From IMG/VR virus record IMGVR_UViG_3300044846_005229, positions 186,001 to 250,000 of that record: a stretch of DNA of 64,000 bases; one strand, given 5' to 3'. The translations under genes were made by a program, and so were the position numbers. Below the pieces are notes generated by a model, which saw only the letters and a list, made by a program, of their open reading frames with translations, was not told the DNA's origin and did no database searches. Each line of letters starts with the position of its first letter. Within the stretch, counting starts at the first letter, position 1. Positions 802-56,406 of the stretch are shown here, in pieces.

Positions 802-891
802 TAGGCGCGTAGGGAATCGAACCCTAACTAGCCGGTAATCTGCCGGAGAGGTCTTCATAAGGGACCCTGTGCTACCGTACACCACACGCCC
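802..891 (-). tRNA. tRNA with UAU anticodon (Ile, AUA-reading) and long variable arm
   Basis: GGGCGTG/CGCGCCT acceptor, GTGT/GCAC D stem, GGTC(C)/(A)GACC anticodon stem with loop CTTATGA, CCGG-CAGATTA-CCGG variable arm, TAGGG-TTCGATT-CCCTA T arm, A73; CCA not encoded. Confidence 0.8.
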
Positions 892-6206: not shown

Positions 6207-6983
6207 CTATATCAGGGGGTGGAGCCTGCCATCGTGGCCAAAATACCGGAGCACCTTGGTTTCCACATCGTACAGACAAAGTTTGGTATCTTCAGGGTCG
6301 ATTTCGCTATGGGAAGACCCACCCATTTGACCGTCGAGGACGATGTTTTTCTCGCTGATGTAAACATTATGATAATGTCCAGCGACCCGGACCCATTCCT
6401 TATCATCATCTTCCAGCCACCATGGGAGGCGATCAGACGTAACTTTGCCATCTTCCAGGGTAACCTTATAGAAAGGACCATAAATCATGGTATTCAGTTC
6501 CTTGCGGGTAATAGCATTGGGCATTACTTGGTGGGTGCCATTATATTTCGGGATGGGCAATCTGCGGGGGAAACAAGCGTGAGCGCACCGGTATTCGGTC
6601 CCTTCCGCATCCCTAAATACAAAGCCATAAGGCATCGAGTCAAGCCAAGGCAATACTTCACCGACTAAGTCAATTCCGCCTCTCTCAAAGTCATCTAAGG
6701 TAGTTCGCAAGTCTTGGAAAACCTTGACCTTGTTTCCCTTGAGGCATCGAACCAGTTTATTTTGGTGATTGCTTTGTAGGATAATAGTGCCAGGAATTTC
6801 CCTTTGAATTTGCCTCACTGCATGGTAAACTCCGACAGAATCCGAGGTTTCGCACCTTGAATCAAAAAGGTCCCCCAGTAGAATCGGGGTCAATCCTTCC
6901 GACAAGCAGTGCCCTAGGGCCGCTTCCAGGGGGGGCAACTGGGAATGGATGTCACCAATGATGGCGTAACGAATGTGTGTCAT
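6207..6983 (-). CDS. calcineurin-like metallophosphoesterase (PPP/Pnkp-phosphoesterase-like)
   Basis: IIGDIHS, LLGDLFD, QSNHQ, CAHAC and AGHYH motifs. Confidence 0.8.
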   Translation of the reverse strand: MTHIRYAIIGDIHSQLPPLEAALGHCLSEGLTPILLGDLFDSRCETSDSVGVYHAVRQIQREIPGTIILQSNHQNKLVRCLKGNKVKVFQDLRTTLDDFERGGIDLVGEVLPWLDSMPYGFVFRDAEGTEYRCAHACFPRRLPIPKYNGTHQVMPNAITRKELNTMIYGPFYKVTLEDGKVTSDRLPWWLEDDDKEWVRVAGHYHNVYISEKNIVLDGQMGGSSHSEIDPEDTKLCLYDVETKVLRYFGHDGRLHPLI

Positions 6984-7599: not shown

Positions 7600-7796
7600 C
7601 TAGTACGGCCTGAACAGCAAGGGAAAGATTATCCATTGGTCGGAAACTCCATCGGGATCAGAACTTGGCAATTATTTCGCCGGATAAACATCAGGGGGAT
7701 ACAACTGATTGATTGCGTCTCTAATTAGGAGAGCAGCGCTTTAAGGTTGTGATAGGCATTTTGCTGTGGGGGTTGTTTGGAACTGTTATCAGTGCC

Positions 7797-7825
7797 ACTC
7801 TAGCATGGTTGCTGCTAGGTGTCAA
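7797..7825 (-). promoter_or_regulatory. sigma70-like promoter
   Basis: TTGACA-17 nt-TAGAGT with extended TG. Confidence 0.6.
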
Positions 7826-7853
7826 CTCTTAACCAAGTTATAAATGTAGTGAA

Positions 7854-7965
7854 TGGGACCAGTAGGATTTGAACCTACACCTCTCCTTTAACGTAGGAAT
7901 TTAATTGCTGATGTATCTTTGACAAGATAACTTTCTTTAGCGCTCTGTCGTTGAGCTATGGTCCC
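7854..7965 (-). ncRNA. tRNA-like RNA with ~41-nt insert carrying a hairpin + CAGCAA between the D arm and an anticodon-like arm
   Basis: GGGACCA/TGGTCCC acceptor, GCTC/GAGC D stem, GTAGG-TTCAAAT-CCTAC T arm, TTCCT-ACGTTAA-AGGAG anticodon-like hairpin, insert containing TATCTT-GTCA-AAGATA-CAT-CAGCAA. Confidence 0.8.
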
Positions 7966-8005
7966 TTGTTTGCTTCGCAAATAGCTTGTTGAAACATGGT
8001 TTAGC

Positions 8006-8054
8006 TAGATAGTTGGTTTTCCGATTTTGAAGGGGATGGTTGCTGAACTATCTA
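8006..8054 (-). ncRNA. stand-alone CAGCAA stem-loop module
   Basis: TAGATAGTT/AACTATCTA 9-bp stem closing a 31-nt loop that starts CAGCAA and ends GAAAACC. Confidence 0.7.
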
Positions 8055-8072
8055 CGTTTGCCGAAGGCAAAG

Positions 8073-8199
8073 TCGAAGAGGCAAGATTCGAACTTGCGTA
8101 TGGCGGTTCCTTTAGCGCATTTGGTGTTGCTGAGCTACCTAAAGCATAACTAGATAGTCCTTTTGCATTACCGCCGCCTTACCACTTGGCTACTCTTCG
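8073..8199 (-). ncRNA. tRNA-like RNA (Cys-like scaffold) with enlarged anticodon loop carrying a hairpin + CAGCAA
   Basis: CGAAGAG/CTCTTCG acceptor, TAGCCAAGTGGTAAGGC D arm, GCGGT/ACCGC anticodon stem, GCAAG-TTCGAAT-CTTGC T arm; insert contains CTATCTAG/TTAGGTAG hairpin then CT-CAGCAA. Confidence 0.8.
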
Positions 8200-8233
8200 T
8201 TTTGGGTGTCTGGGTGTCTTAACCGTTAAAGGT

Positions 8234-8296
8234 CAACAAGGTGAGTTTTGCTGGATTTGAACCATTCCCCTTTGTTGCCCTGGTGAACTACCAGGG
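8234..8296 (-). ncRNA. structured element with T-loop hairpin and CAGCAA
   Basis: CCCTGGT-AGTTC-ACCAGGG hairpin; CAACAAAGG/CCTTGTTG stem enclosing TGG-TTCAAAT-CCA followed by GCAA. Confidence 0.5.
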
Positions 8297-8315
8297 AAGC
8301 TAACTTTATTTAAAC

Positions 8316-8367
8316 AAGATGGTTGGTTTTTCTGTTACAAAGAAAGGTTAGATTGCTGAACCATCTT
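8316..8367 (-). ncRNA. stand-alone CAGCAA stem-loop module
   Basis: AAGATGGTT/AACCATCTT 9-bp stem closing a 34-nt loop that starts CAGCAA and ends GAAAAACC; covaries with 8006-8054. Confidence 0.7.
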
Positions 8368-8407
8368 ACGGGATTGCCTTACTTACCGCCCATTAACCCT
8401 ATTTCCA

Positions 8408-9914
8408 TCAGGCGAATACCATACCCACAGAGTCATACCTTTCAGTATATACCGCGTCCCGCATCAGGGACAATGGGGGTAATTGCATTGCCGGTAAGAA
8501 CTGCGGTCAGGATTGACGGAGAGCAACCGCTAACGAGAGCGGTACCGGAATCATGGACCTTCATCGGGACGTTATCTGAGGAATTGACATTCCAGAAGAT
8601 GACATCAGGCAAGCTATAACCAGCTTGGGCATACTTGATTCGAATTGCTTCGTAGTTAGTGACTTTTTTTCCGCTATACCCCCAACCAGAACCAGTGCCA
8701 CCCATGACAACACAGTCATCAAACTGCATGTCTGAGACAATAATCAGTTTGCGGGGCATGTCTGACTCTGGAATGTTGTTCCGAACTGCAGTATCCAGAA
8801 TAAGGTCAAACGTCTTTTGGATGTCAGTGTTACCACCCCAATCTGCTCGGCTCAGGTTTCTAACCTTGCTGGAGAGACTATTGCCAGTCACAGTTTGTAG
8901 GGAGGGGTTACCCGAAAATGTTAGAAACTTGTTTTTCCAGATGCCAGTATTACGCTCTGCGATATACATCGCCAGAGAGATGGATACTGCCATCGGACGA
9001 CCCTCCATGGAACCGCTAACATCGGCAACAACAAGCCCATTCAATTCCTTGCCTTCCATGTAGTTGGGTAGAGCCTGCCAGAGGAGTTCAAGAGTATCGT
9101 TTGATTCGTTGTTATAGAGACACTTCTCAACGATGTCATACGGGTACAAAGTACCGGCATTGATTTTTGCCTCGCCTTTCTTGACTGCATCGAGGTAAGA
9201 CTGGTAGCGAGCACCATCATGGTTAGCAAAAGCTTTCCGATACATGAAGCCTGCACGAGAAGGCAACTTGCTATACTCAATGGCGTCCCACTCACGGGCA
9301 CACATTGGTTGTTCTACGATATTGATTTGGGTGCGAAGCGCAGTCAGGGCCTTGCGGTATTGACGCTCATTCCAACCCATTGCCTTAGCGATAAGACGGC
9401 CAACCCGCTTGGATTCCTTGCTAGAAGCGTTAATGGAAGGTAGCCATTTTGCTAGTAGTGACACTGGGTTTCCAACTTCGGTGTTCAGGTCAGTATTAAG
9501 CTGCGTCTTAATTGCTTCTAGGGCGATGACCCAAACTAGCGTCCCTTCGAGGGCCACAACATCGTCCCAGCGACCGTACTGCGGGATCAGGCCTACCAGC
9601 TTAGCTCCAATGGTCGCATCATTGCGAACCAGCTCCTTGAAGACTTCCCGGAAGATTTTTCGTTCTCCTTGCCCAATCCCCCTAATATCACGTGCCCAAA
9701 ACAGGATCCGGGTCGCAGTTTCAGGATCTTCGGCATAGGCTGACTTAAAGAGTTTAATGGCTGCATCAACATTATCACGGCAAGCTGCGATTTTACCGAA
9801 AAGGTCTAGGTTCTTTTGGCCCGTGGACCTATAGGCCTTTGCGCCGTTTGCAGTTGTGGTGATATTGGAGTTGGTATCCAGTTGGTTCTCAAGTGCATTC
9901 AAAAAGGTTGTCAT
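8408..9914 (-). CDS. DUF2828 family TROVE/Ro60-like + vWA domain protein (apparent +1 frameshift in the G5 run at 8475-8479)
   Basis: TTANGAKAYRSTG, WARDIRG.GQGER, YGRWDD, AKWLP, MIDAS VVADVSGSM, IVSDMQFD; removing one C restores the C-terminus ITPLSLMRDAVYTERYDSV. Confidence 0.85.
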
Positions 9915-10064
9915 TTTTCTTCTCTCAAGTTGATTGTTTTGTGTTTGTGTTTCGGATACAAATAATAGCTGTATCAACTTTGCCCCTAGGAGTTAATTTT
10001 AGGGGTGGTGGTGGGGGGCACTGACGGCCCCGATATTGGGCAGTTTGTAACTTAGCTGGGTCAA

Positions 10065-10354: not shown

Positions 10355-10897
10355 TTAGTACCCTAAATCGGGAGGAGCTTTGCCCCCAACTACAGCCGGT
10401 GAAAACCTAACTACGGTTACCTCCCCCATGTCCCCCAAATCTTCGGCAAACTTGTTCAAGCTAGCGAGAACCCTATCGGGGTTTCCACCTGCCAAACCAC
10501 ACCCAATCATTGGGAATCCGATTTTAACGGGAATTCTTGTTTCAGGGGGTAAACCCTGGCGACATACCTTAGCATATAACCTATTGAGAAATGTCTCAAA
10601 GGCTTCGTACTCAAATATGTCTTTGCCACGCCCAAATGTAAACTGGGTATAGGCGTTAATAATCGTAAAGCCACAACCATTTGCCCCCACAACGTCAACT
10701 TCGGAAAAGGTCCCGAGTTTATTCCGGGTGCCATACTTTGTCTGTCTATCGGCGATAGCCACCTCTGGCCACCTCTTCACAATTTGACCGGCGATACCGC
10801 TAGCCATCGTATGGAAGCAATTGGCACCATGACAAATAATGTCGAAGTCACCATTGTCTGCCATTGTGAGTAGGTTGTTGTCAATAATTGTTAACAT
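10355..10897 (-). CDS. macrodomain (ADP-ribose binding/hydrolase) protein
   Basis: HGANCFHTMASGIAGQI, INAYTQF, IGFPMIGCGLAGG motifs typical of phage macrodomains. Confidence 0.9.
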   Translation of the reverse strand: MLTIIDNNLLTMADNGDFDIICHGANCFHTMASGIAGQIVKRWPEVAIADRQTKYGTRNKLGTFSEVDVVGANGCGFTIINAYTQFTFGRGKDIFEYEAFETFLNRLYAKVCRQGLPPETRIPVKIGFPMIGCGLAGGNPDRVLASLNKFAEDLGDMGEVTVVRFSPAVVGGKAPPDLGY

Positions 10898-10950
10898 CCG
10901 ATTAGGTCCAATTTGGGTGGGGAATTTGTGAGATGGCGATACCCTACCAC

Positions 10951-11778
10951 TCAAAGTGGCGGGTGGTTAAGTTTATTGAGCACATATTCAAGTCTGGTGG
11001 GCTTTAGATCAAGGGGGATGTTATCTAAATTACCTGATGCGCCCGTACAATCGCCTTCTACTCCTGTGCAGTCCCCAATTAAGTTAGAGCAGTCCCCAAT
11101 TAAGTTAATTACCCTCCCGTATAAACCAGTGCAATTGCCGGTTAGGCCAGAAATAAATCCCCTCAGATTGGAGCAATCACCAAATAAATCCGGGTTAATG
11201 GTCCCTAAAGCCCCCGATAGGTCACCTGTTAATTTAGGGTTAATCATCCCTTTAACACCACTCAAGTCCCCGGTTAAGTCTTTATTAAGAGTACCGGATA
11301 AGCGTCCCCATGGGTCAATACCTAAACCCATATTACCGTACAAATTAGAAACATCCCCCTCCAATGATGGCAAGATTCTTCCCCTAAGATCGGAGTTTAT
11401 CTCACCTGTCAAATAACTCACATCTCCAATAAGCCTAGGATTGATCGTTCCACTGAGGTTAGAACAATCACCGAAGAGGAAAGGGCTTAGTTCGTCATAG
11501 GAGAGGCTCGGGTTTAACCCCTTTTGTACAGCCCCCTCACCATCTAACCAAAAAAATCTTTCGCTAGATTCAAAGAAGTCATGTATCTTGCTTCTCATTT
11601 CTAAGATTTCCGGCTCCAGGGGTATTTGAGGGGTTGCTTCAAATAAGGGTACAAGCTTGCCAACCGCTTCATCCCATGCGTAAGGTGTACGGATATTGTC
11701 ACCTAGCTTAAACCTGACTTCATTTAAGTCATAATAAAAGTCTAGCAGAACATTAAGATTGTCTTGTAACTGAGTCAT
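10951..11778 (-). CDS. protein with GD(C/V/L)S-x-L-x-G tandem repeats (probable beta-solenoid)
   Basis: About 12 imperfect repeats such as GDCSNLSG, GDVSYLTG, GDLSGVKG, GDCTGVEG. Confidence 0.7.
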   Translation of the reverse strand: MTQLQDNLNVLLDFYYDLNEVRFKLGDNIRTPYAWDEAVGKLVPLFEATPQIPLEPEILEMRSKIHDFFESSERFFWLDGEGAVQKGLNPSLSYDELSPFLFGDCSNLSGTINPRLIGDVSYLTGEINSDLRGRILPSLEGDVSNLYGNMGLGIDPWGRLSGTLNKDLTGDLSGVKGMINPKLTGDLSGALGTINPDLFGDCSNLRGFISGLTGNCTGLYGRVINLIGDCSNLIGDCTGVEGDCTGASGNLDNIPLDLKPTRLEYVLNKLNHPPL

Positions 11779-13262: not shown

Positions 13263-13715
13263 TCAAATCCCCATCGAAAGGTGCGCTTCATCGCGAATCC
13301 CCTCAAGGATGACCCCAAGTTTGTTGGCGCCATCTCCGGTCACAACATCAACACCCCAATAAGTGTCTCCCCAAGTGTTGCCTTCGATTAGCTTTGCGTT
13401 CCCTGTTTGTGCTAGGAGGTTTTTTAGATCTGGGTTCTGAAATTTAATGCGTAGTAACTCTTCCATAACTTTGTCTTTTCTAAGTTCCCACCCTATAGGG
13501 TCAAAGTCCTTTAAAATGCCGTTGCGGTTCCCGGCGGCTTTAGCCTCGCTTGGAGACTGCATCTTTGCGATTTGGTGGCGAGTTTCGGAGTCCTGAGTCT
13601 TAGCTGCTTGAAAGGCGTGTTCGACTGTGGGGTATTTGATCCCTTCGTATTCTAGAACGCTCTCATAAAAGTTTGACAGAAAGCTGAATTGGCCTGAGAA
13701 TTTGGTAATGGTCAT
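13263..13715 (-). CDS. NADAR family protein (YbiA-like)
   Basis: FLSNFY, YPTVEHAFQAAKT, W...K..VM...L..KF.NP.L...L..TG...L.EGNTWGD.YWG, GANKLG. Confidence 0.92.
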   Translation of the reverse strand: MTITKFSGQFSFLSNFYESVLEYEGIKYPTVEHAFQAAKTQDSETRHQIAKMQSPSEAKAAGNRNGILKDFDPIGWELRKDKVMEELLRIKFQNPDLKNLLAQTGNAKLIEGNTWGDTYWGVDVVTGDGANKLGVILEGIRDEAHLSMGI

Positions 13716-14062
13716 TTGTCTCCGAATTCGATAAACAGATTCATTTCCCAATAGTCAAATTGATCTTGGATGGCGTCCTTCGCTTCGTTGTATTCTTCCT
13801 CGGTAAGGCAGCCGGGGTTCTGATATAGGACCTTCATTCTTTCTAAAGAATTTTGCAGGCCCCGGATATATTCAGATTTGTACTTGCGTTTTTGGTATTC
13901 TTCCAAAGATTCCTTGACGCCGTCAGGCCAATAAATGGTGTCGGTTCGGGAGTCAAATCCTGGTAAGTCTCTGCTGAGGGCTTTGGAATTTTTAGCGGCT
14001 TGCTGATTGCACCATTCTTGTGCCCAGGAGAGTGGGCGAGTTGAGTCTGCTTCGAGTATCAT
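13712..14062 (-). CDS. hypothetical protein
   Basis: Coupled by ATGA overlap. Confidence 0.65.
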   Translation of the reverse strand: MILEADSTRPLSWAQEWCNQQAAKNSKALSRDLPGFDSRTDTIYWPDGVKESLEEYQKRKYKSEYIRGLQNSLERMKVLYQNPGCLTEEEYNEAKDAIQDQFDYWEMNLFIEFGDK

Positions 14063-14560: not shown

Positions 14561-15652
14561 TCAGCCACTCTTCTTCCCCTTAGATAGCAACCACTCATTA
14601 CTAATGGCCTTAAAGGAAAACTCAGAGTCATTGGACTTGAATACTAAGCCCTCACGTTTAACGTTAGGATTCATGGACGGGCCATCGGCGTACGCTAGTA
14701 GCTCATCTAGGTTGGCGAAACTATCGGTTACACACATTGCGGGGTGTAGGACAGGGGCATGGGTTAAATCAGCGCCTAATGGAACCAGGTACTTGTCCAA
14801 GAGGTTCATTCTGGCCCCTGGCTTCATGTAGGTCTGGTTGTCGATATCGAAGATGTCGAACAGATATAGCCGTTGTCCCTTGATTCCTTCCTGATTGCCC
14901 TGGATGCCTTCTCCAAGGGTTTCCGACTGCAAGGCAATACTGTGACCAGTCTTCCCATTGTATGCAAGCATAGCATCGATAATGCCCTGGTCCCTAGCAG
15001 CCTTCCAGAAACTATTGCCTTCGGTTTCCTTGAGATCAAGGTTACGGCTGCAAACCCCAATGTCACCGTCTTTGACGTAAATCGTACATGAAGATCCGTC
15101 GAGCTTCAGGGTAACTTCGTAGGTCTCATTCCTGTGGGTCTCAAAGATTTCGCTAGCGATATTCTGACAACGTTCCTGGTCTGTCTTCACAAGGAAGCTC
15201 GGGAAGTTGCCTTTTGCAATGCCAGCCAAACAAGCCGGTACAGGAGCCTCCCATTTCTGAATGCCGAGAATTTCGGTTACGTCGTCTCCTTCCTGAAGGC
15301 CCCTCTCAAATGCGGTGACATAGTAACTGAAGTCTACATAGAGCTTTAGAGAAATAGGCAACAGCAACCCTTGGCTGAGTTGCCCACGGAGCTTAACGGT
15401 CTTGAGACGTTCGCCCTTCACGCCGTTATACTCACGGGGCTCTTTCCCATTAGAAAGGAAGGGCGCCAACTCGTGAGGAATAAATGAGTCGGGTTCTGCG
15501 TAAATTACCAAATCCCCTACTTCATACTTCCCCACAGAATCCACAACCCACCAGCCATTCACACGGTAGGCACAGATTCTATCGGCTTCAGGGATGGGGC
15601 GAATCTCAGCAATGCGCTGGACAGATGCAAGTTTGCGTTCGATGTTTGCCAT
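14561..15652 (-). CDS. ATP-dependent RNA ligase, DRB0094/Rnl2-like family
   Basis: RKLASVQRI N-terminal OB-like module, KTDQERCQN, motif I KLDGSS, SRN, REGLVFK, FKAISNEWL. Confidence 0.92.
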   Translation of the reverse strand: MANIERKLASVQRIAEIRPIPEADRICAYRVNGWWVVDSVGKYEVGDLVIYAEPDSFIPHELAPFLSNGKEPREYNGVKGERLKTVKLRGQLSQGLLLPISLKLYVDFSYYVTAFERGLQEGDDVTEILGIQKWEAPVPACLAGIAKGNFPSFLVKTDQERCQNIASEIFETHRNETYEVTLKLDGSSCTIYVKDGDIGVCSRNLDLKETEGNSFWKAARDQGIIDAMLAYNGKTGHSIALQSETLGEGIQGNQEGIKGQRLYLFDIFDIDNQTYMKPGARMNLLDKYLVPLGADLTHAPVLHPAMCVTDSFANLDELLAYADGPSMNPNVKREGLVFKSNDSEFSFKAISNEWLLSKGKKSG

Positions 15653-23840: not shown

Positions 23841-24950
23841 CTACCGGATCCCAAGCAGTTTGTCAAGTTGTTGGGGCCGTAGGTCTGCTAGCCACTGCCG
23901 GAAGGTAGGGTACCTGCCGGAGCGTATTGCGAAACAGGCTGCCGATACTGAGGGGGCATCTTTGAGAATTGCAATGGCGAATTCCTTTTGCGTTAAGGCT
24001 CCATACTTAAGAAGCAGAGTCTCACATAAAGATTGCATCGCGGGGATAGCAGAGTCTAGATGAATCGAAAACTTGTCTCTATATTCTGGAAAGTGCAATA
24101 GAAACTCATCTAAATCGTCACTAAGAAACAATTCCGAAAAGTCTGGGTCGCCATTGTTCCATGCCCGGTGTAGTTGGCAGTATAATCTAGACTTAATCTT
24201 AACCCTTCCAACCCCATCAAACAATACATAACCTTCATGATTTGAATCTCGCTTTTCAACTTTGGTAAGTACAGAGTCAAGGTCACTGAATTCGTAAGAT
24301 GGGGCCACCACATAGCCATACCACCCAAACTCTTCCAGATCACACTCTTCGAAGTCCTGATCTCGGTCTCGTACTGCTAGTAAGGGAAGTTTGGGCGCAT
24401 CGTAGTTAATAACATCTTTATTATCTAGGTGACATAACTCAAAGATGTAGCAAATTGACGGGTCTAGGCATTCCTTTAAGTACCCTACTTTTTCGAATAC
24501 ATCCCAGAATAATTCATCAAAGGTTTTTTTAGTTTTTCCTACTAGGCCATCCCCTGCTACTGAACCAGAAGTTGAAACGAGCCATTGCCCCCTATACTCA
24601 AACAATTTAATTAAGGAGCCGGAAAATTTCTCATAAACCTTGGTGCGAGACCAATCTAACTGATGGCAATGGCCCTCACCAATGTTAAAGAATCTATCGA
24701 ACGCATATGCAACCAGGCGGTAATACGGCGAGTGATCCCCATCGTTATCAACACGCTCGACCACAGCACCACGGCAGGCACAAACCAGCGGATTTGATTT
24801 GGATGCTAAAATCGTCCCATATTTCAAATTAAAAAGGTTCGGATACCTCTCATCGCGAGTAACACGAATGTCATACTCGGCCAGCTCGTCCAGGGCATTG
24901 TAACCCCGCTCGTTAAGCCAGTCAATCAAGTAGTGGCGCAAGTTTTCCAT
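23841..24950 (-). CDS. T4 Rnl1-like RNA ligase with motif I variant KFSGS
   Basis: CRG, FDRFFN.GE, YEKFSGSL, IFEL, EGYV, RVKIKS..Y pattern of Rnl1 family. Confidence 0.85.
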   Translation of the reverse strand: MENLRHYLIDWLNERGYNALDELAEYDIRVTRDERYPNLFNLKYGTILASKSNPLVCACRGAVVERVDNDGDHSPYYRLVAYAFDRFFNIGEGHCHQLDWSRTKVYEKFSGSLIKLFEYRGQWLVSTSGSVAGDGLVGKTKKTFDELFWDVFEKVGYLKECLDPSICYIFELCHLDNKDVINYDAPKLPLLAVRDRDQDFEECDLEEFGWYGYVVAPSYEFSDLDSVLTKVEKRDSNHEGYVLFDGVGRVKIKSRLYCQLHRAWNNGDPDFSELFLSDDLDEFLLHFPEYRDKFSIHLDSAIPAMQSLCETLLLKYGALTQKEFAIAILKDAPSVSAACFAIRSGRYPTFRQWLADLRPQQLDKLLGIR

Positions 24951-39920: not shown

Positions 39921-40165
39921 GGGGACCGAAGCCCCCCGCAATGAGTCAGAATGCTATCGCTCAAACGGCGACGGCAGTCCTCTCGAATTTGACGATTTTG
40001 TTAGCGTCTATGTTGTGCTTATGCAAGCGGCTTTCGGTAATTGGCTTGCTGTCGGTCGATTCCAGAGCGGACCCTCGAAAGGGAAATGGATCCGGGGCGA
40101 TTCGAACGCCCGTGTCGCGCAGTAGTGACAACTACCTACACCCAGTTTTTAGCCGTATGGTAGGG
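39921..40165 (-). ncRNA. ssrA: two-piece (circularly permuted) tmRNA; tag ANKIVKFERTAVAV*
   Basis: T arm GGGCG-TTCGAAT-CGCCC (40095-40111) and 3' acceptor CGGATCC-A precede a 12-nt spacer and 5' acceptor GGGTCCG with G3-U70; TAGAC-GCT resume context; tag ORF 39961-40005; outer ends approximate. Confidence 0.92.
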
Positions 40166-40177
40166 CTTTAACAATTA

Positions 40178-40423
40178 TTACCCGTTACAGTTAAAAGTCG
40201 ATGTAATCTCATACTGCCTAAGTAAGTTAAACAACTCAGTTTGAAGGTCTTCGAAGCCGCCCACAAGTTGATCCTGAGTGACCGCATAGCAAGGACCCAC
40301 TTTAGAGCCAGCCCAAGGTATGATTTGTTTGTGCTCTAGAATCTTGTTCCTGTACTTAAGAAGTAGGGAGTTAATCCCGGAGGCTAGCTGAACTTTATCG
40401 GATAGAACTATTTGTTTTAACAT
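40178..40423 (-). CDS. hypothetical protein
   Basis: Start MLKQIV. Confidence 0.55.
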   Translation of the reverse strand: MLKQIVLSDKVQLASGINSLLLKYRNKILEHKQIIPWAGSKVGPCYAVTQDQLVGGFEDLQTELFNLLRQYEITSTFNCNG

Positions 40424-55662: not shown

Positions 55663-55964
55663 TTTGGTTCTAGGGCCCTGGACAATTGATTAAACTACTG
55701 GGGCTATGGACGAAGAGGACCAGCTCGTCCTGATCCAAGTAACCAGCCACCAATAAGACTAAAAAAATGTGCCAAAAAAATGTGTCAGGGAAAGGTCCTG
55801 GAATTGCGAAGCCAATGGAGACTAAAAGGGTTGCGACAGTGAGTAGAATGTAAGGGTTAGGCATTGGGTTTTGTAGAGGGGTGATCCGATGCCATTATAG
55901 GGCAAGTTTTCCCTGGGGAAACGGTCGGTTTTCCGAACCCATGGTTAAAACTCCGAAGCCAAAA

Positions 55965-56046
55965 TACCGAATGTCGGACTCGAACCGACACGCCTTGCGG
56001 CAATCGCTTTTGAGGCGGCCATGACTACCAATTCCATCAATTCGGC
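55965..56046 (-). tRNA. trnL: tRNA-Leu(CAA)
   Basis: GCCGAAT/ATTCGGT acceptor, loop CTCAAAA, long variable arm, GTCGG-TTCGAGT-CCGAC T arm, A73. Confidence 0.92.
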
Positions 56047-56120
56047 ATTTGCCCTGAGTAGCCAGCTCAAGGACTTTTTGGATGTTTGAACCGTCGCTCA
56101 TTTCACCCTCCATTTTGATA

Positions 56121-56262
56121 TGGGAGATGGGCTCCTTTAAGGAGTTAACTCCCGAGCAAGTTACTGATTGCTCACCGATAGAATTTTGCTAACCTAAGTT
56201 AACAATGCACAGGTATTAATACCTGAGGGGCTATCTCCCAAAGTCTCAAGAATTCTTGAGAC
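56121..56262. repeat. cluster of palindromes and hairpins between the two tRNA-Leu genes
   Basis: GGAGTTAACTCC, GAGCAA/TTGCTC, CAGGTATTAATACCTG and GTCTCAAGAATTCTTGAGAC; the first three are enclosed by TGGGAGAT/ATCTCCCA. Confidence 0.7.
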
Positions 56263-56325
56263 GCTTTTTACCCAGATATTCCGGGCACACCGTCTCTTTT
56301 TGGCTGGCCCAGAGAAGACGGGCTA

Positions 56326-56406
56326 TGGGGGCAGGGGGACTCGAACCCCCACGGCCGAAGCCAGAAGTTTTTAAGACTTCCGTGTCTACCATTCCACCAT
56401 GCTCCC
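56326..56406 (-). tRNA. trnL: tRNA-Leu(UAA)
   Basis: GGGAGCA/TGCCCCC acceptor, GAAGT-CTTAAAA-ACTTC anticodon arm, GGC-TTCG-GCC variable arm, GGGGG-TTCGAGT-CCCCC T arm. Confidence 0.95.

What the first reader, a model, noticed from the sequence alone, without database searches (positions are those of the whole stretch)
8006..8367. Circular permutation and covariation of the CAGCAA module
Seen: the free modules read [stem 5' strand]-CAGCAA-31 to 34 nt loop-(G)AAAACC-[stem 3' strand]. Their stems are AAGATGGTT/AACCATCTT and TAGATAGTT/AACTATCTA, two compensatory base-pair changes. In the tRNA-like RNAs the same helix appears in reverse order, AAA(A)G..-[ATCT(A/T)G strand]-short loop-[AG(A/G)T strand]-CAGCAA, so the tRNA body closes the big loop. 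Inference: selection preserves a helix flanked by CAGCAA and an A-rich strand regardless of where the backbone is broken, which points to a protein-recognised junction rather than a DNA repeat.
Basis: partly seen in the sequence, partly recalled or inferred. Interest (0 to 1): 0.8.

Follow-up and report, generated by a model that had tools for sequence, protein, structure and literature searches.

The report
Ro-like protein's RNA tag, permuted
A short RNA hairpin followed by the letters (A)CAGCAA recurs, alone or built into tRNA-shaped RNAs, beside a phage gene whose predicted protein folds like the RNA-binding Ro60 protein. It is most likely that protein's undescribed partner RNA, found in phages of many bacterial groups.

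Summary
On the minus strand, two free hairpins (8369..8314 and 8060..8006) read stem-CAGCAA-loop-A-rich-stem. Two tRNA-like RNAs (8199..8073 and 7965..7854) carry the same helix and CAGCAA in circularly permuted order. A third free copy (CAGCUA variant, 9979..9925) lies just before the neighbouring gene.

That gene (9914..8442, Pfam DUF2828+DUF7788) gives a confident AlphaFold model. Its nine best PDB matches are all Ro60/TROVE proteins.

The helix covaries: 94.5% of cells pair against 30-49% in slid controls, and 9 of 11 pairs change on both sides. G.U outnumbers A.C 48 to 3, so the pairing is RNA on the gene's strand.

The stem-(A)CAGCAA hairpin recurs beside homologous genes:
- 10 of 14 sampled cultured phage lineages, with a weaker copy in an eleventh: 24 hits on the gene strand, 1 opposite, 3.4 expected.
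- 67 of 80 bacterial or archaeal genome contigs: 162 hits against 20.

Sometimes a tRNA-like domain sits inside the loop. Rfam 15 and the searched literature hold no such motif.

Best reading: a new Y-RNA-like partner family for a Ro60-like phage protein, set here among RNA-repair genes. Binding and function are inferred, not shown.

The parts
9925..9979 (-). Leader copy of the module, ending 10 nt before the start codon of the Ro-like gene: AAGUUGAU-A-CAGCUA-loop-AAAACA-AUCAACUU.
   Evidence: Model R1 hit at 40.2 bits, E 1.4e-6; sequence. The same AAGUUGAU/AUCAACUU stem lies just before the gene in L001, L011, L019, L021, L025 and Synechococcus phage B3.
8442..9914 (-). Gene for a 490-aa Ro60-like protein: helical N-domain (DUF2828) plus a C-terminal vWA domain (DUF7788) with a MIDAS motif. 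The likely start is ATG 9914; the ORF list extends to TTG 9977.
   Evidence: Pfam DUF7788 4e-48 and DUF2828 2e-34. PHROG 850 'RNA-binding protein' 5e-145. AF2 pLDDT 89.7, pTM 0.87. The nine best Foldseek PDB hits are all Ro60/TROVE, TM 0.50-0.58 over the full length.
8314..8369 (-). Free module 1: an 11-bp closing stem, CAGCAA at the 5' side of the loop and AAAAACC at the 3' side.
   Evidence: R1 53.6 bits.
8205..8312 (-). Unassigned stretch between module 1 and tRNA-like RNA 1. It has a 7-bp hairpin and a T-arm-like UGG-UUCAAAU-CCA that runs into GCAAAAC. It may be a decayed tRNA-like unit.
   Evidence: No Rfam hit and a fold no better than shuffles. Relatives have CAGCUA plus a T-arm here.
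8073..8199 (-). tRNA-like RNA 1 (acceptor CGAAGAG). It has intact acceptor, D and T arms and a 5-6 bp anticodon stem. The loop of that stem is replaced by 62 nt holding the permuted module; helix plus CAGCAA lie at 8157..8127.
   Evidence: Rfam tRNA 47.6 bits, model 1-71 with a 62-nt insert; folds; orthologues; helix statistics.
8006..8060 (-). Free module 2: a 9-11 bp stem, CAGCAA and AAAACC. It sits between the two tRNA-like RNAs and is flanked by small hairpins.
   Evidence: R1 39.4 bits.
7854..7965 (-). tRNA-like RNA 2 (acceptor GGGACCA). The permuted module (7929..7905) is inserted between the D arm and an anticodon-arm-like hairpin, UCCU-ACGUUAA-AGGA.
   Evidence: Rfam tRNA 47.8 bits with a 54-nt insert. 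Fold z = -3.8. Orthologue alignment A4.
7797..7825 (-). Promoter-like site (TTGACA-17-TAGAGT with TG) whose spacer contains a CAGCAA. It is not a module.
10355..10954 (-). Neighbouring gene with a weak Macro-domain match, as context.
   Evidence: Pfam Macro E 4e-4, 20.7 bits, below the 22-bit cut-off. Sinorhizobium phage phiM7 has an Appr-1-p processing gene in the same relative place.
13263..13751 (-). NADAR-domain gene, as context.
   Evidence: Pfam NADAR 2.8e-25.
14561..15652 (-). RNA ligase gene (PF09414 with an N-terminal OB fold), as context.
23841..24950 (-). T4 Rnl1-type RNA ligase gene, as context.
   Evidence: Pfam RNA_lig_T4_1 1.3e-14.

Best explanation
The CAGCAA module is the recognition element of a previously undescribed family of Y-RNA-like small RNAs. 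These RNAs partner the Ro60-like (DUF2828 + vWA) protein encoded next to them.

The element is a 7-11 bp helix with a conserved distal end (WAGR/YCUW). Its 3'-side strand runs, after 0-4 nt, into single-stranded (A)CAGCAA. In cyanophages an A-rich strand enters the other side.

Because only this junction matters, it occurs in several backbone topologies:
- as a minimal hairpin RNA lying between tRNA-like genes, which would be released if the usual tRNA-end processing acts there (inferred);
- as an extra arm inside a complete tRNA-shaped RNA, at position 26/27 or in the anticodon loop;
- in other lineages, as the closing stem around a tRNA-like domain.

The protein is inferred to bind the junction as Ro60 binds the Y RNA stem. 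The tRNA-shaped part would then act as the effector or tether module, as in bacterial YrlA. A copy placed immediately before the protein's start codon probably allows co-expression or autoregulation.

In this phage the RNP sits among RNA-repair genes: two RNA ligases, a NADAR gene, a phosphoesterase and a weak Macro-domain match. It probably acts in tRNA or RNA damage control or in counter-defence during infection.

Shown: motif, helix covariation, permutation, strandedness, Ro60-like fold, and co-location across lineages. Inferred: binding, processing, and function.
For: Anatomy and permutation.

Helix covariation with controls.

RNA-strand asymmetry, G.U 48 against A.C 3.

Specificity inside the window, with 3 model hits in 64 kb all flanking the gene.

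Protein fold. The AF2 model has pLDDT 89.7. The nine best PDB hits are all Ro60/TROVE, including phage phiLo Ro60 9kop and Xenopus Ro60-RNA complexes. Public phage records annotate homologues as 'Ro-like RNA binding protein'.

Co-location in relatives. 28 viral contigs at 41-100% protein identity carry module clusters. These include L027 at 41%, which has a completely different stem. Synechococcus phage B3 has modules on both sides of its gene, and its embedded copy is annotated 'tRNA-Pseudo'.

Co-location in distant lineages. The lineages with rule hits beside the gene are Synechococcus B3, E. coli Felixounavirus, Mycobacterium cluster L, Listeria, Bacillus, Campylobacter, Staphylococcus, Enterococcus, Klebsiella and Sinorhizobium phages. 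A weaker 6-bp copy lies over the start of the Vibrio nt-1 gene. Counts are 24 hits on the gene strand, 1 opposite and 3.4 +/- 1.6 in shuffles. In 80 genome contigs there are 162 hits against 20, with 67 of 80 loci positive and a pile-up just upstream of the gene.

tRNA-like domains inside module loops.

RNA-repair neighbourhood; RtcB lies near the Listeria homologue.

Literature. Y RNAs pair with Ro60, are encoded next to it and mimic tRNA (PMC4201824). Felixounavirus Bas63 gp130 is Ro60-like, lies upstream of tRNAs and counters the ppl defence; its authors guessed that some of the tRNAs are Y RNAs (PMC11482910).
Against: No binding or expression data exist. The metatranscriptome contigs that matched are 90-95% relatives and cannot show transcript ends.

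The protein has no Pfam TROVE match even at E <= 10.

The motif differs from known Ro-binding motifs, GGUCCGA and GNCGAAN0-1G. No Rfam Y RNA model matches.

Folding energies of single modules are only modestly better than shuffles, z from -2 to +0.5.

Three of 14 phage lineages (an Erwinia jumbo phage, Stenotrophomonas DLP_6, Aeromonas Ah1) show no module within 3 kb.

Adjacency to tRNA arrays could by itself explain some co-location.

The rule-based scan selects for pairing, so only its strand and shuffle contrasts are unbiased.
Confidence: 0.65

Rival explanations
1. The modules are processing or punctuation signals for polycistronic tRNA-array transcripts. A host or phage endoribonuclease would recognise them, or they would stabilise precursors, with no role for the Ro-like protein.
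For: Free modules sit exactly between tRNA(-like) genes, within 0-5 nt of the tRNA ends. The gene family is usually embedded in or beside tRNA arrays.
Against: In the window, the other tRNA genes (802-1376 and 55964-56406) have no modules. In Mycobacterium, Staphylococcus and many gut contigs, modules flank the gene with few or no tRNAs in the stretch fetched. A processing signal would not need to be built into the tRNA body, nor to lie over the gene's ribosome-binding site.
Confidence: 0.1
2. The module is only a cis-regulatory leader or operator through which the protein, or another factor, controls translation of the Ro-like mRNA. The other copies would be decoys or evolutionary by-products.
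For: A copy ends 10-25 nt before the start codon in the window, in phage B3 and in Campylobacter and Sinorhizobium phages. A weak 6-bp stem spans the AUG in Vibrio nt-1. Hits in gut contigs pile up in the 750 nt before the gene.
Against: Most copies lie downstream of the gene or inside tRNA-like RNAs, often several per locus. This reading is also compatible with, and largely contained in, the main explanation, since the protein would still bind the motif.
Confidence: 0.1
3. The embedded modules are protein-dependent introns, or insertions of a small mobile element, in real tRNA genes. They would be removed with the help of the phage RNA ligases. The free copies would be solo or excised forms.
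For: Removing the insert from the 26/27-type RNAs would leave a roughly 72-nt cloverleaf with an anticodon-like arm. Two RNA ligase genes are nearby. The permutation resembles what circularisation of an excised piece would give.
Against: There is no group I or other intron hit in Rfam. The anticodon-like loops are irregular: C33, C37, or 6-9 nt. Their triplets differ between orthologues with identical acceptor stems (UAC/UCC/CAU, UGU/GGU, GUU/UUU), which is unlike real tRNAs. Canonical tRNAs with the same anticodons exist in the same arrays. The motif is also common with no tRNA around it.
Confidence: 0.07
4. A DNA-level feature: inverted repeats bound by a DNA-binding protein, recombination sites, or promoter elements.
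For: The stems are inverted repeats. One CAGCAA (7814..7809) does lie in a promoter-like site. In several relatives a TTGACA...TAAGAT promoter-like sequence precedes the first free module.
Against: Stem sequences change by compensatory substitutions while the asymmetric flanks stay fixed. G.U is tolerated and A.C is not, 48 to 3. There is a strong strand bias relative to the gene. The loop can hold a whole tRNA-like domain.
Confidence: 0.03

Closest known systems
Bacterial Y RNAs (YrlA, Yrn1) with Ro60/Rsr
   Same: Small RNAs are encoded next to a ring-plus-vWA RNA-binding protein gene, often in several copies. The closing stem is formed by the RNA ends and carries the protein-binding site. 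A tRNA-like domain (T and D arms) serves as a second module (PMC4201824).
   Different: The protein here is DUF2828-type and has no Pfam TROVE match. The motif is (A)CAGCAA placed 3' of the 5' stem strand, not GNCGAAN0-1G. No Rfam Y RNA model matches. The module also exists without any tRNA-like part. It also occurs as an arm inside an otherwise complete tRNA with free acceptor ends, the reverse of YrlA's arrangement.
Thermus phage phiLo Ro60 with Yrl1 and Yrl2 (PDB 9KOP; PMC12135203)
   Same: A phage-encoded Ro60-type protein has partner RNAs encoded beside the gene. It is the best structural match of the model.
   Different: phiLo Ro60 is a canonical TROVE protein, and its Yrl RNAs were found through the CGAA motif. 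There is no CAGCAA motif, no permuted forms and no tRNA-array context.
Felixounavirus Bas63 gp130 (PhageMaP preprint, PMC11482910)
   Same: It has the same described features as the Alf5 homologue sampled here (L030): a Ro60-like protein encoded directly upstream of the tRNA array in a Felixounavirus. It was shown to counter the ppl defence system. The authors suggested that some of the 'tRNAs' might be Y RNAs.
   Different: No RNA partner or motif was identified there. Here the hairpins lie between the tRNAs (L030 4713-4778, 4879-4936, 5334-5400) rather than being the annotated tRNAs themselves. I did not compare gp130 with the window's protein directly.
Ordinary phage tRNA genes and tRNA pseudogenes
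   Same: Acceptor, D and T arms are intact. Public records annotate an embedded copy as 'tRNA-Pseudo'.
   Different: A conserved 45-55 nt structured insert with a fixed motif is maintained across orthologues, which is not decay. The anticodon-like loops are irregular and hypervariable.

Membership tests
Y RNA / YrlA (Ro60-associated ncRNA) | Encoded adjacent to a Ro60-type (helical ring + vWA) protein gene | tested here: met
   The gene at 9914..8442 has a Ro60-like fold. Modules flank it and flank its homologues.
Y RNA / YrlA (Ro60-associated ncRNA) | Stem formed by the 5' and 3' ends enclosing a large internal loop | tested here: met
   The free modules meet this. The embedded copies are circular permutations and do not.
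Y RNA / YrlA (Ro60-associated ncRNA) | Conserved Ro-binding motif GGUCCGA (animals) or GNCGAAN0-1G (bacteria) in the stem | tested here: not met
   The conserved motif is (A)CAGCAA after the 5' strand. The known motifs are taken from PMC4201824.
Y RNA / YrlA (Ro60-associated ncRNA) | Match to a curated Rfam Y RNA model | tested here: not met
   cmscan of 7600-8460 at E <= 10 gives only tRNA and chance hits. The same holds for distant loci.
Y RNA / YrlA (Ro60-associated ncRNA) | tRNA-like domain with T and D arms | tested here: met
   Present in the embedded copies and in loop-borne copies in other lineages. Absent from the minimal free modules.
Y RNA / YrlA (Ro60-associated ncRNA) | Physical binding to the Ro-type protein | not testable with these tools
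   Needs EMSA, RIP or a solved structure.
Ro60 / TROVE protein | Sequence match to the Pfam TROVE domain | tested here: not met
   There is no TROVE hit at E <= 10, and no PDB sequence hit to Ro60.
Ro60 / TROVE protein | Alpha-helical repeat domain followed by a vWA domain with MIDAS, superposable on Ro60 | tested here: met
   The nine best Foldseek hits are all Ro60/TROVE, TM 0.50-0.58 over about 500-570 aligned columns. D298, S300 and S302 are invariant in 68 homologues.
tRNA | Cloverleaf with acceptor, D and T arms | tested here: met
   Rfam tRNA 47.6 and 47.8 bits over model positions 1-71. All 32 distinct copies have perfect or near-perfect 7-bp acceptor stems.
tRNA | Standard anticodon arm (5-bp stem, 7-nt loop, U33, purine 37) contiguous with the D arm | tested here: not met
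   There is a 54-62 nt insert, and ARAGORN does not call them. The loops are irregular and differ between orthologues.
tRNA intron (group I or bulge-helix-bulge) | Recognisable intron structure whose removal restores a canonical tRNA | tested here: inconclusive
   There is no intron family hit. Removal would leave a cloverleaf in the 26/27-type RNAs, but with atypical loops. Splicing itself cannot be tested here.

The most novel reading that the evidence does not exclude
The (A)CAGCAA helix is a universal tag by which Ro60-like proteins of many phages hold a set of tRNA-shaped RNAs. The anticodon-like loops of these RNAs diversify rapidly. The RNAs would act as baits or decoys for host tRNA-targeting defences such as anticodon nucleases, or as sensors of tRNA damage coupled to the neighbouring RNA ligases. 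That would make this a widespread, modular, RNA-guided counter-defence RNP, not a housekeeping Y RNA system.
Probability: 0.2. Interest if true: 0.9.

Novelty: new variant of a known kind. Interest (0 to 1): 0.78.

Why it matters
DUF2828 proteins occur in at least 701 sequenced phages, including the Felix O1, P100/A511-like, Tsamsa, KVP40-like and mycobacteriophage cluster L groups. The family has thousands of metagenomic clusters. One member has been reported to counter a bacterial defence system, yet no RNA partner has been described.

A short, searchable motif that marks the partner RNAs makes the system directly testable:
- it says which RNAs to pull down and which nucleotides to mutate;
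- it explains why 'pseudo-tRNAs' and unannotated gaps sit next to these genes;
- it corrects annotation, since several records place small hypothetical CDSs in these noncoding stretches.

The natural circular permutations are a ready-made experiment. They show that the helix-CAGCAA junction, not the RNA's connectivity, is what is conserved. They also extend the Ro-Y RNA pairing to a second, sequence-unrelated branch of Ro-like proteins.

Tried and rejected
- Megablast of 25 kb of the window against sequenced phages found nothing. The closest cultured relatives appear only at protein level.
- Rfam at permissive thresholds gave no family other than tRNA for the modules.
- Sequence searches of the protein against the PDB and the Pfam TROVE model found only a weak vWA similarity. 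The Ro60 link needed a structure prediction.
- Metatranscriptome runs hold only 90-95% relatives as contigs, with no direction or ends, so expression and processing remain open.
- Thermodynamic stability is a weak argument: z-scores run from -2 to +0.5 for single modules.
- The small hairpin at about 7836..7795 with CAGCAA was first counted as a module. I rejected it because it coincides with a strong promoter-like site.
- No intrinsic terminator was found in the cluster.
- The intron and mobile-element reading was considered and ranked low, because the anticodon-like loops vary between orthologues and the motif is frequent without tRNAs.
- The stretch 8312..8205 could not be assigned.
- Literature searches for DUF2828, for CAGCAA with phage and tRNA-like, for Ro-like proteins and for Ro60 anti-defence found no description of this RNA.

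Full report
**What is in the window**

The window is part of a 279-kb viral contig (L002 is identical to it). The contig recurs in lake-water metagenomes. All genes near the finding are on the minus strand.

Read on that strand, the finding's region is a cluster of small RNA-like units directly downstream of a 490-aa gene (9914..8442):
- free module 1, 8369..8314
- an unassigned stretch, 8312..8205
- tRNA-like RNA 1, 8199..8073
- free module 2, 8060..8006
- tRNA-like RNA 2, 7965..7854

The two free modules read stem, CAGCAA, loop, AAAA(A)CC, stem.

Rfam's tRNA model matches both tRNA-like RNAs end to end but must skip 62 and 54 nt at the anticodon region. ARAGORN does not call them. Inside the inserts the order is A-rich strand, helix strand a, short loop, helix strand b, 2-3 nt, CAGCAA. 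That is a circular permutation of the free module, with the tRNA body taking the place of the big loop.

**Further copies and specificity**

A covariance model built from free modules finds only three places in the whole 64 kb at E <= 1. Two are the modules above. The third is at 9981..9926, with CAGCUA instead of CAGCAA, and ends 10 nt before the most likely start codon of the gene. One further CAGCAA, at 7814..7809, lies in a promoter-like TTGACA-17-TAGAGT and is not a module.

**The helix is under selection as RNA**

I fetched 28 viral contigs encoding homologues of the neighbouring protein at 41-100% identity. Nearly all carry clusters of the same units next to the gene.

On an alignment of 34 distinct free modules, the helix pairs in 94.5% of cells, against 30-49% when partners are slid by 1-3 columns. 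Nine of 11 pairs change on both sides, and no shuffle reaches the observed score.

For 28 embedded copies the helix pairs in 89%, against 28-47%, with 4 of 8 pairs changing on both sides.

G.U pairs outnumber A.C 48 to 3. So the pairing is read on the gene's strand as RNA, not as a DNA palindrome.

Single-module folding energies are only modestly better than shuffles. The case therefore rests on comparison, not thermodynamics.

**The tRNA-like carriers**

I found 32 distinct module-bearing tRNA-like RNAs. All have 7-bp acceptor stems, U8, a D arm and a GGUUCRANNCC T arm.

In most of them the module sits between the D arm and a short hairpin that looks like an anticodon arm. In the CGAAGAG family, to which window RNA 1 belongs, it sits inside the loop of the anticodon stem.

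The anticodon-like loops are irregular. Their central triplets differ between orthologues that share the same acceptor stem: UAC/UCC/CAU, UGU/GGU, AGG/GAG, GUU/UUU. The rest of each RNA is highly conserved. Canonical tRNAs with the same anticodons occur in the same arrays. These RNAs are therefore unlikely to be ordinary decoders.

Free modules lie exactly between such genes, within a few nucleotides of the tRNA ends. Ordinary tRNA-end processing would release them as about 55-nt hairpins; this step is inferred.

**The neighbouring protein**

Pfam names only DUF2828 and DUF7788, with weak vWA similarity. PHROG 850 calls the family 'RNA-binding protein'.

An AlphaFold model built on 68 diverse homologues is confident, with pLDDT 89.7 and pTM 0.87. 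Its nine best PDB matches are all Ro60/TROVE structures, aligned over the full length at TM 0.50-0.58. They include the Thermus phage phiLo Ro60 and Xenopus and human Ro60 with bound RNAs. The next matches are isolated vWA domains. The vWA MIDAS residues are invariant in the family.

So the protein is a Ro60-like ring-plus-vWA protein that sequence methods do not connect to TROVE. Homologues occur in 701 sequenced phages, and some records already say 'Ro-like RNA binding protein'.

**The motif follows the gene family**

The closest cultured relative is Synechococcus phage B3, at 58% identity. It has modules before and after its gene, and one embedded copy is annotated as a pseudo-tRNA.

I then sampled 14 annotated phage lineages. 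A simple rule was used: stem of at least 7 bp, 0-3 nt, CAGCAA, loop of 12-80 nt. It gives 24 hits on the gene's strand, 1 on the other strand and 3.4 +/- 1.6 in dinucleotide shuffles. Twenty of the 24 lie in noncoding DNA next to the gene.

Lineages with rule hits beside the gene are Synechococcus B3 and phages of E. coli (Felixounavirus), Mycobacterium (cluster L), Listeria, Bacillus, Campylobacter, Staphylococcus, Enterococcus, Klebsiella and Sinorhizobium. Vibrio nt-1 has only a weaker 6-bp copy spanning its start codon. An Erwinia jumbo phage, Stenotrophomonas DLP_6 and Aeromonas Ah1 show none within 3 kb.

In 80 contigs from bacterial and archaeal genome assemblies the counts are 162 against 20. 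Sixty-seven loci are positive, and hits pile up in the 750 nt before the gene. In 134 of the 162 an A precedes CAGCAA. In 110 the stem begins WARR, for example AAGGCAC...GUGCCUU.

Stems are otherwise unrelated between lineages, for example AGACCAA, UGAGCGC, AGGAAUC, UAGACAC and AUGGUACU. That is covariation on a large scale.

In several gut-derived loci Rfam and ARAGORN call a tRNA inside the module's loop. This is a third topology, in which the module helix encloses the D, anticodon and T arms.

**Interpretation**

The simplest account is that the helix-(A)CAGCAA junction is the binding site of the adjacent Ro60-like protein. These RNAs would then be its Y-RNA-like partners.

This parallels what is established for Ro60. 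Y RNAs are encoded next to the gene, bind through a conserved stem, and in bacteria carry a tRNA-like domain (PMC4201824; phage example PMC12135203).

It differs in three ways:
- the protein branch (no TROVE sequence signature);
- the motif (known ones are GGUCCGA and GNCGAAN0-1G);
- the modular, permuted architecture.

A copy just before the start codon in several lineages suggests co-transcription or autoregulation.

Function is inferred from context. The window has two RNA ligase genes, a NADAR gene, a phosphoesterase and a weak Macro-domain match around the locus. The Listeria homologue lies 1.3 kb from RtcB. The Bas63 homologue is reported to counter the ppl defence system, and its authors speculated that some neighbouring tRNAs are Y RNAs (PMC11482910).

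**Rivals**

- A pure tRNA-processing signal is unlikely. Other tRNAs in the window lack the motif, and the motif occurs with few or no tRNAs in the stretch fetched in some lineages.
- A purely cis-regulatory leader does not explain the downstream and embedded copies.
- An intron or mobile insertion is not excluded for the 26/27-type RNAs. It is disfavoured by the variable, irregular anticodon-like loops and the lack of any intron signature.
- A DNA-level repeat is contradicted by the strand bias, the G.U asymmetry and the compensatory changes.

**Novelty**

Rfam 15 has no matching family. The searched literature has no description of an RNA partner for DUF2828 proteins. The Ro-like nature of the protein is already noted in annotations and in one preprint. 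I therefore rate this as a new variant of a known kind (Ro-Y RNA ribonucleoproteins) with a new, widely distributed RNA motif.

**Limits**

There are no binding, expression or end-mapping data (one search was inconclusive). The rule-based scans select for pairing, so only their strand and shuffle contrasts count. The sampled lineages are a small, non-random subset. The E-values of my covariance model are rough.

Noticed in passing
window 39921-40183 (-): A cyanobacterial-type, two-piece (permuted) tmRNA gene is encoded by this phage contig (Rfam cyano_tmRNA 72.8 bits; tmRNA_permuted 56.1 bits).
   Followed up: no
window 802-891 (-); also L015 8294-8381 and L019 1456-1545: A 90-nt tRNA-Ile(UAU) has an extra hairpin in the variable region and a 9-nt anticodon loop in the predicted fold. 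It is conserved in length in relatives.
   Followed up: partly
A4 columns about 78-92 (window 7888..7874 in tRNA-like RNA 2): The anticodon-like loops of orthologous module-bearing tRNA-like RNAs carry different triplets (UAC/UCC/CAU, UGU/GGU, AGG/GAG, GUU/UUU), while the rest of each RNA is nearly invariant. This may reflect diversifying selection.
   Followed up: partly
window 8205-8312 (-): An unassigned stretch has a 7-bp hairpin and a T-arm-like UGG-UUCAAAU-CCA that overlaps a CAGCAA. Relatives have CAGCUA plus a T arm here. It may be a decayed unit.
   Followed up: partly
window 6207-6983, 10355-10954, 13263-13751, 14561-15652, 23841-24950 (all -): An RNA-repair-type neighbourhood surrounds the locus: a metallophosphoesterase, a weak (sub-threshold) Macro-domain match, a NADAR gene, an RNA ligase with an OB fold and a T4 Rnl1-type RNA ligase.
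   Followed up: partly
L019 7285-7387, L015 9093-9189, L023 4635-4736: The wcaG RNA motif (Rfam RF01761) lies a few kb downstream of the locus in related viral contigs.
   Followed up: no
L027 5657-5730; L039 6647-6722: There are suppressor-type tRNAs near the Ro-like gene. ARAGORN calls a tRNA with anticodon CUA in a 41%-identity relative. Sinorhizobium phage phiM7 has an annotated 'tRNA-TERM'.
   Followed up: no
L030 5321-5644; L038 4515-4975; L036 4519-4608: Public phage records place small hypothetical CDSs, often on the opposite strand, over or beside stretches that hold CAGCAA hairpins or unannotated tRNA-like RNAs. These CDSs are probably spurious. Rfam also finds an unannotated tRNA at L030 4952-5025.
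   Followed up: partly
L017, L021, L025 and L029 (for example L029 5215-5245): A near-consensus TTGACA-17-TAAGAT promoter-like site lies just upstream of the first downstream free module in several relatives. This suggests that the RNA cluster has its own promoter there. The window has only a weak equivalent, at 8473..8444.
   Followed up: partly
window 8072..8058 and 7988..7972 (-): Small hairpins bracket free module 2: UUUGCC-UUCG-GGCAAA and UUUGC-GAA-GCAAA. Their role is unknown.
   Followed up: no
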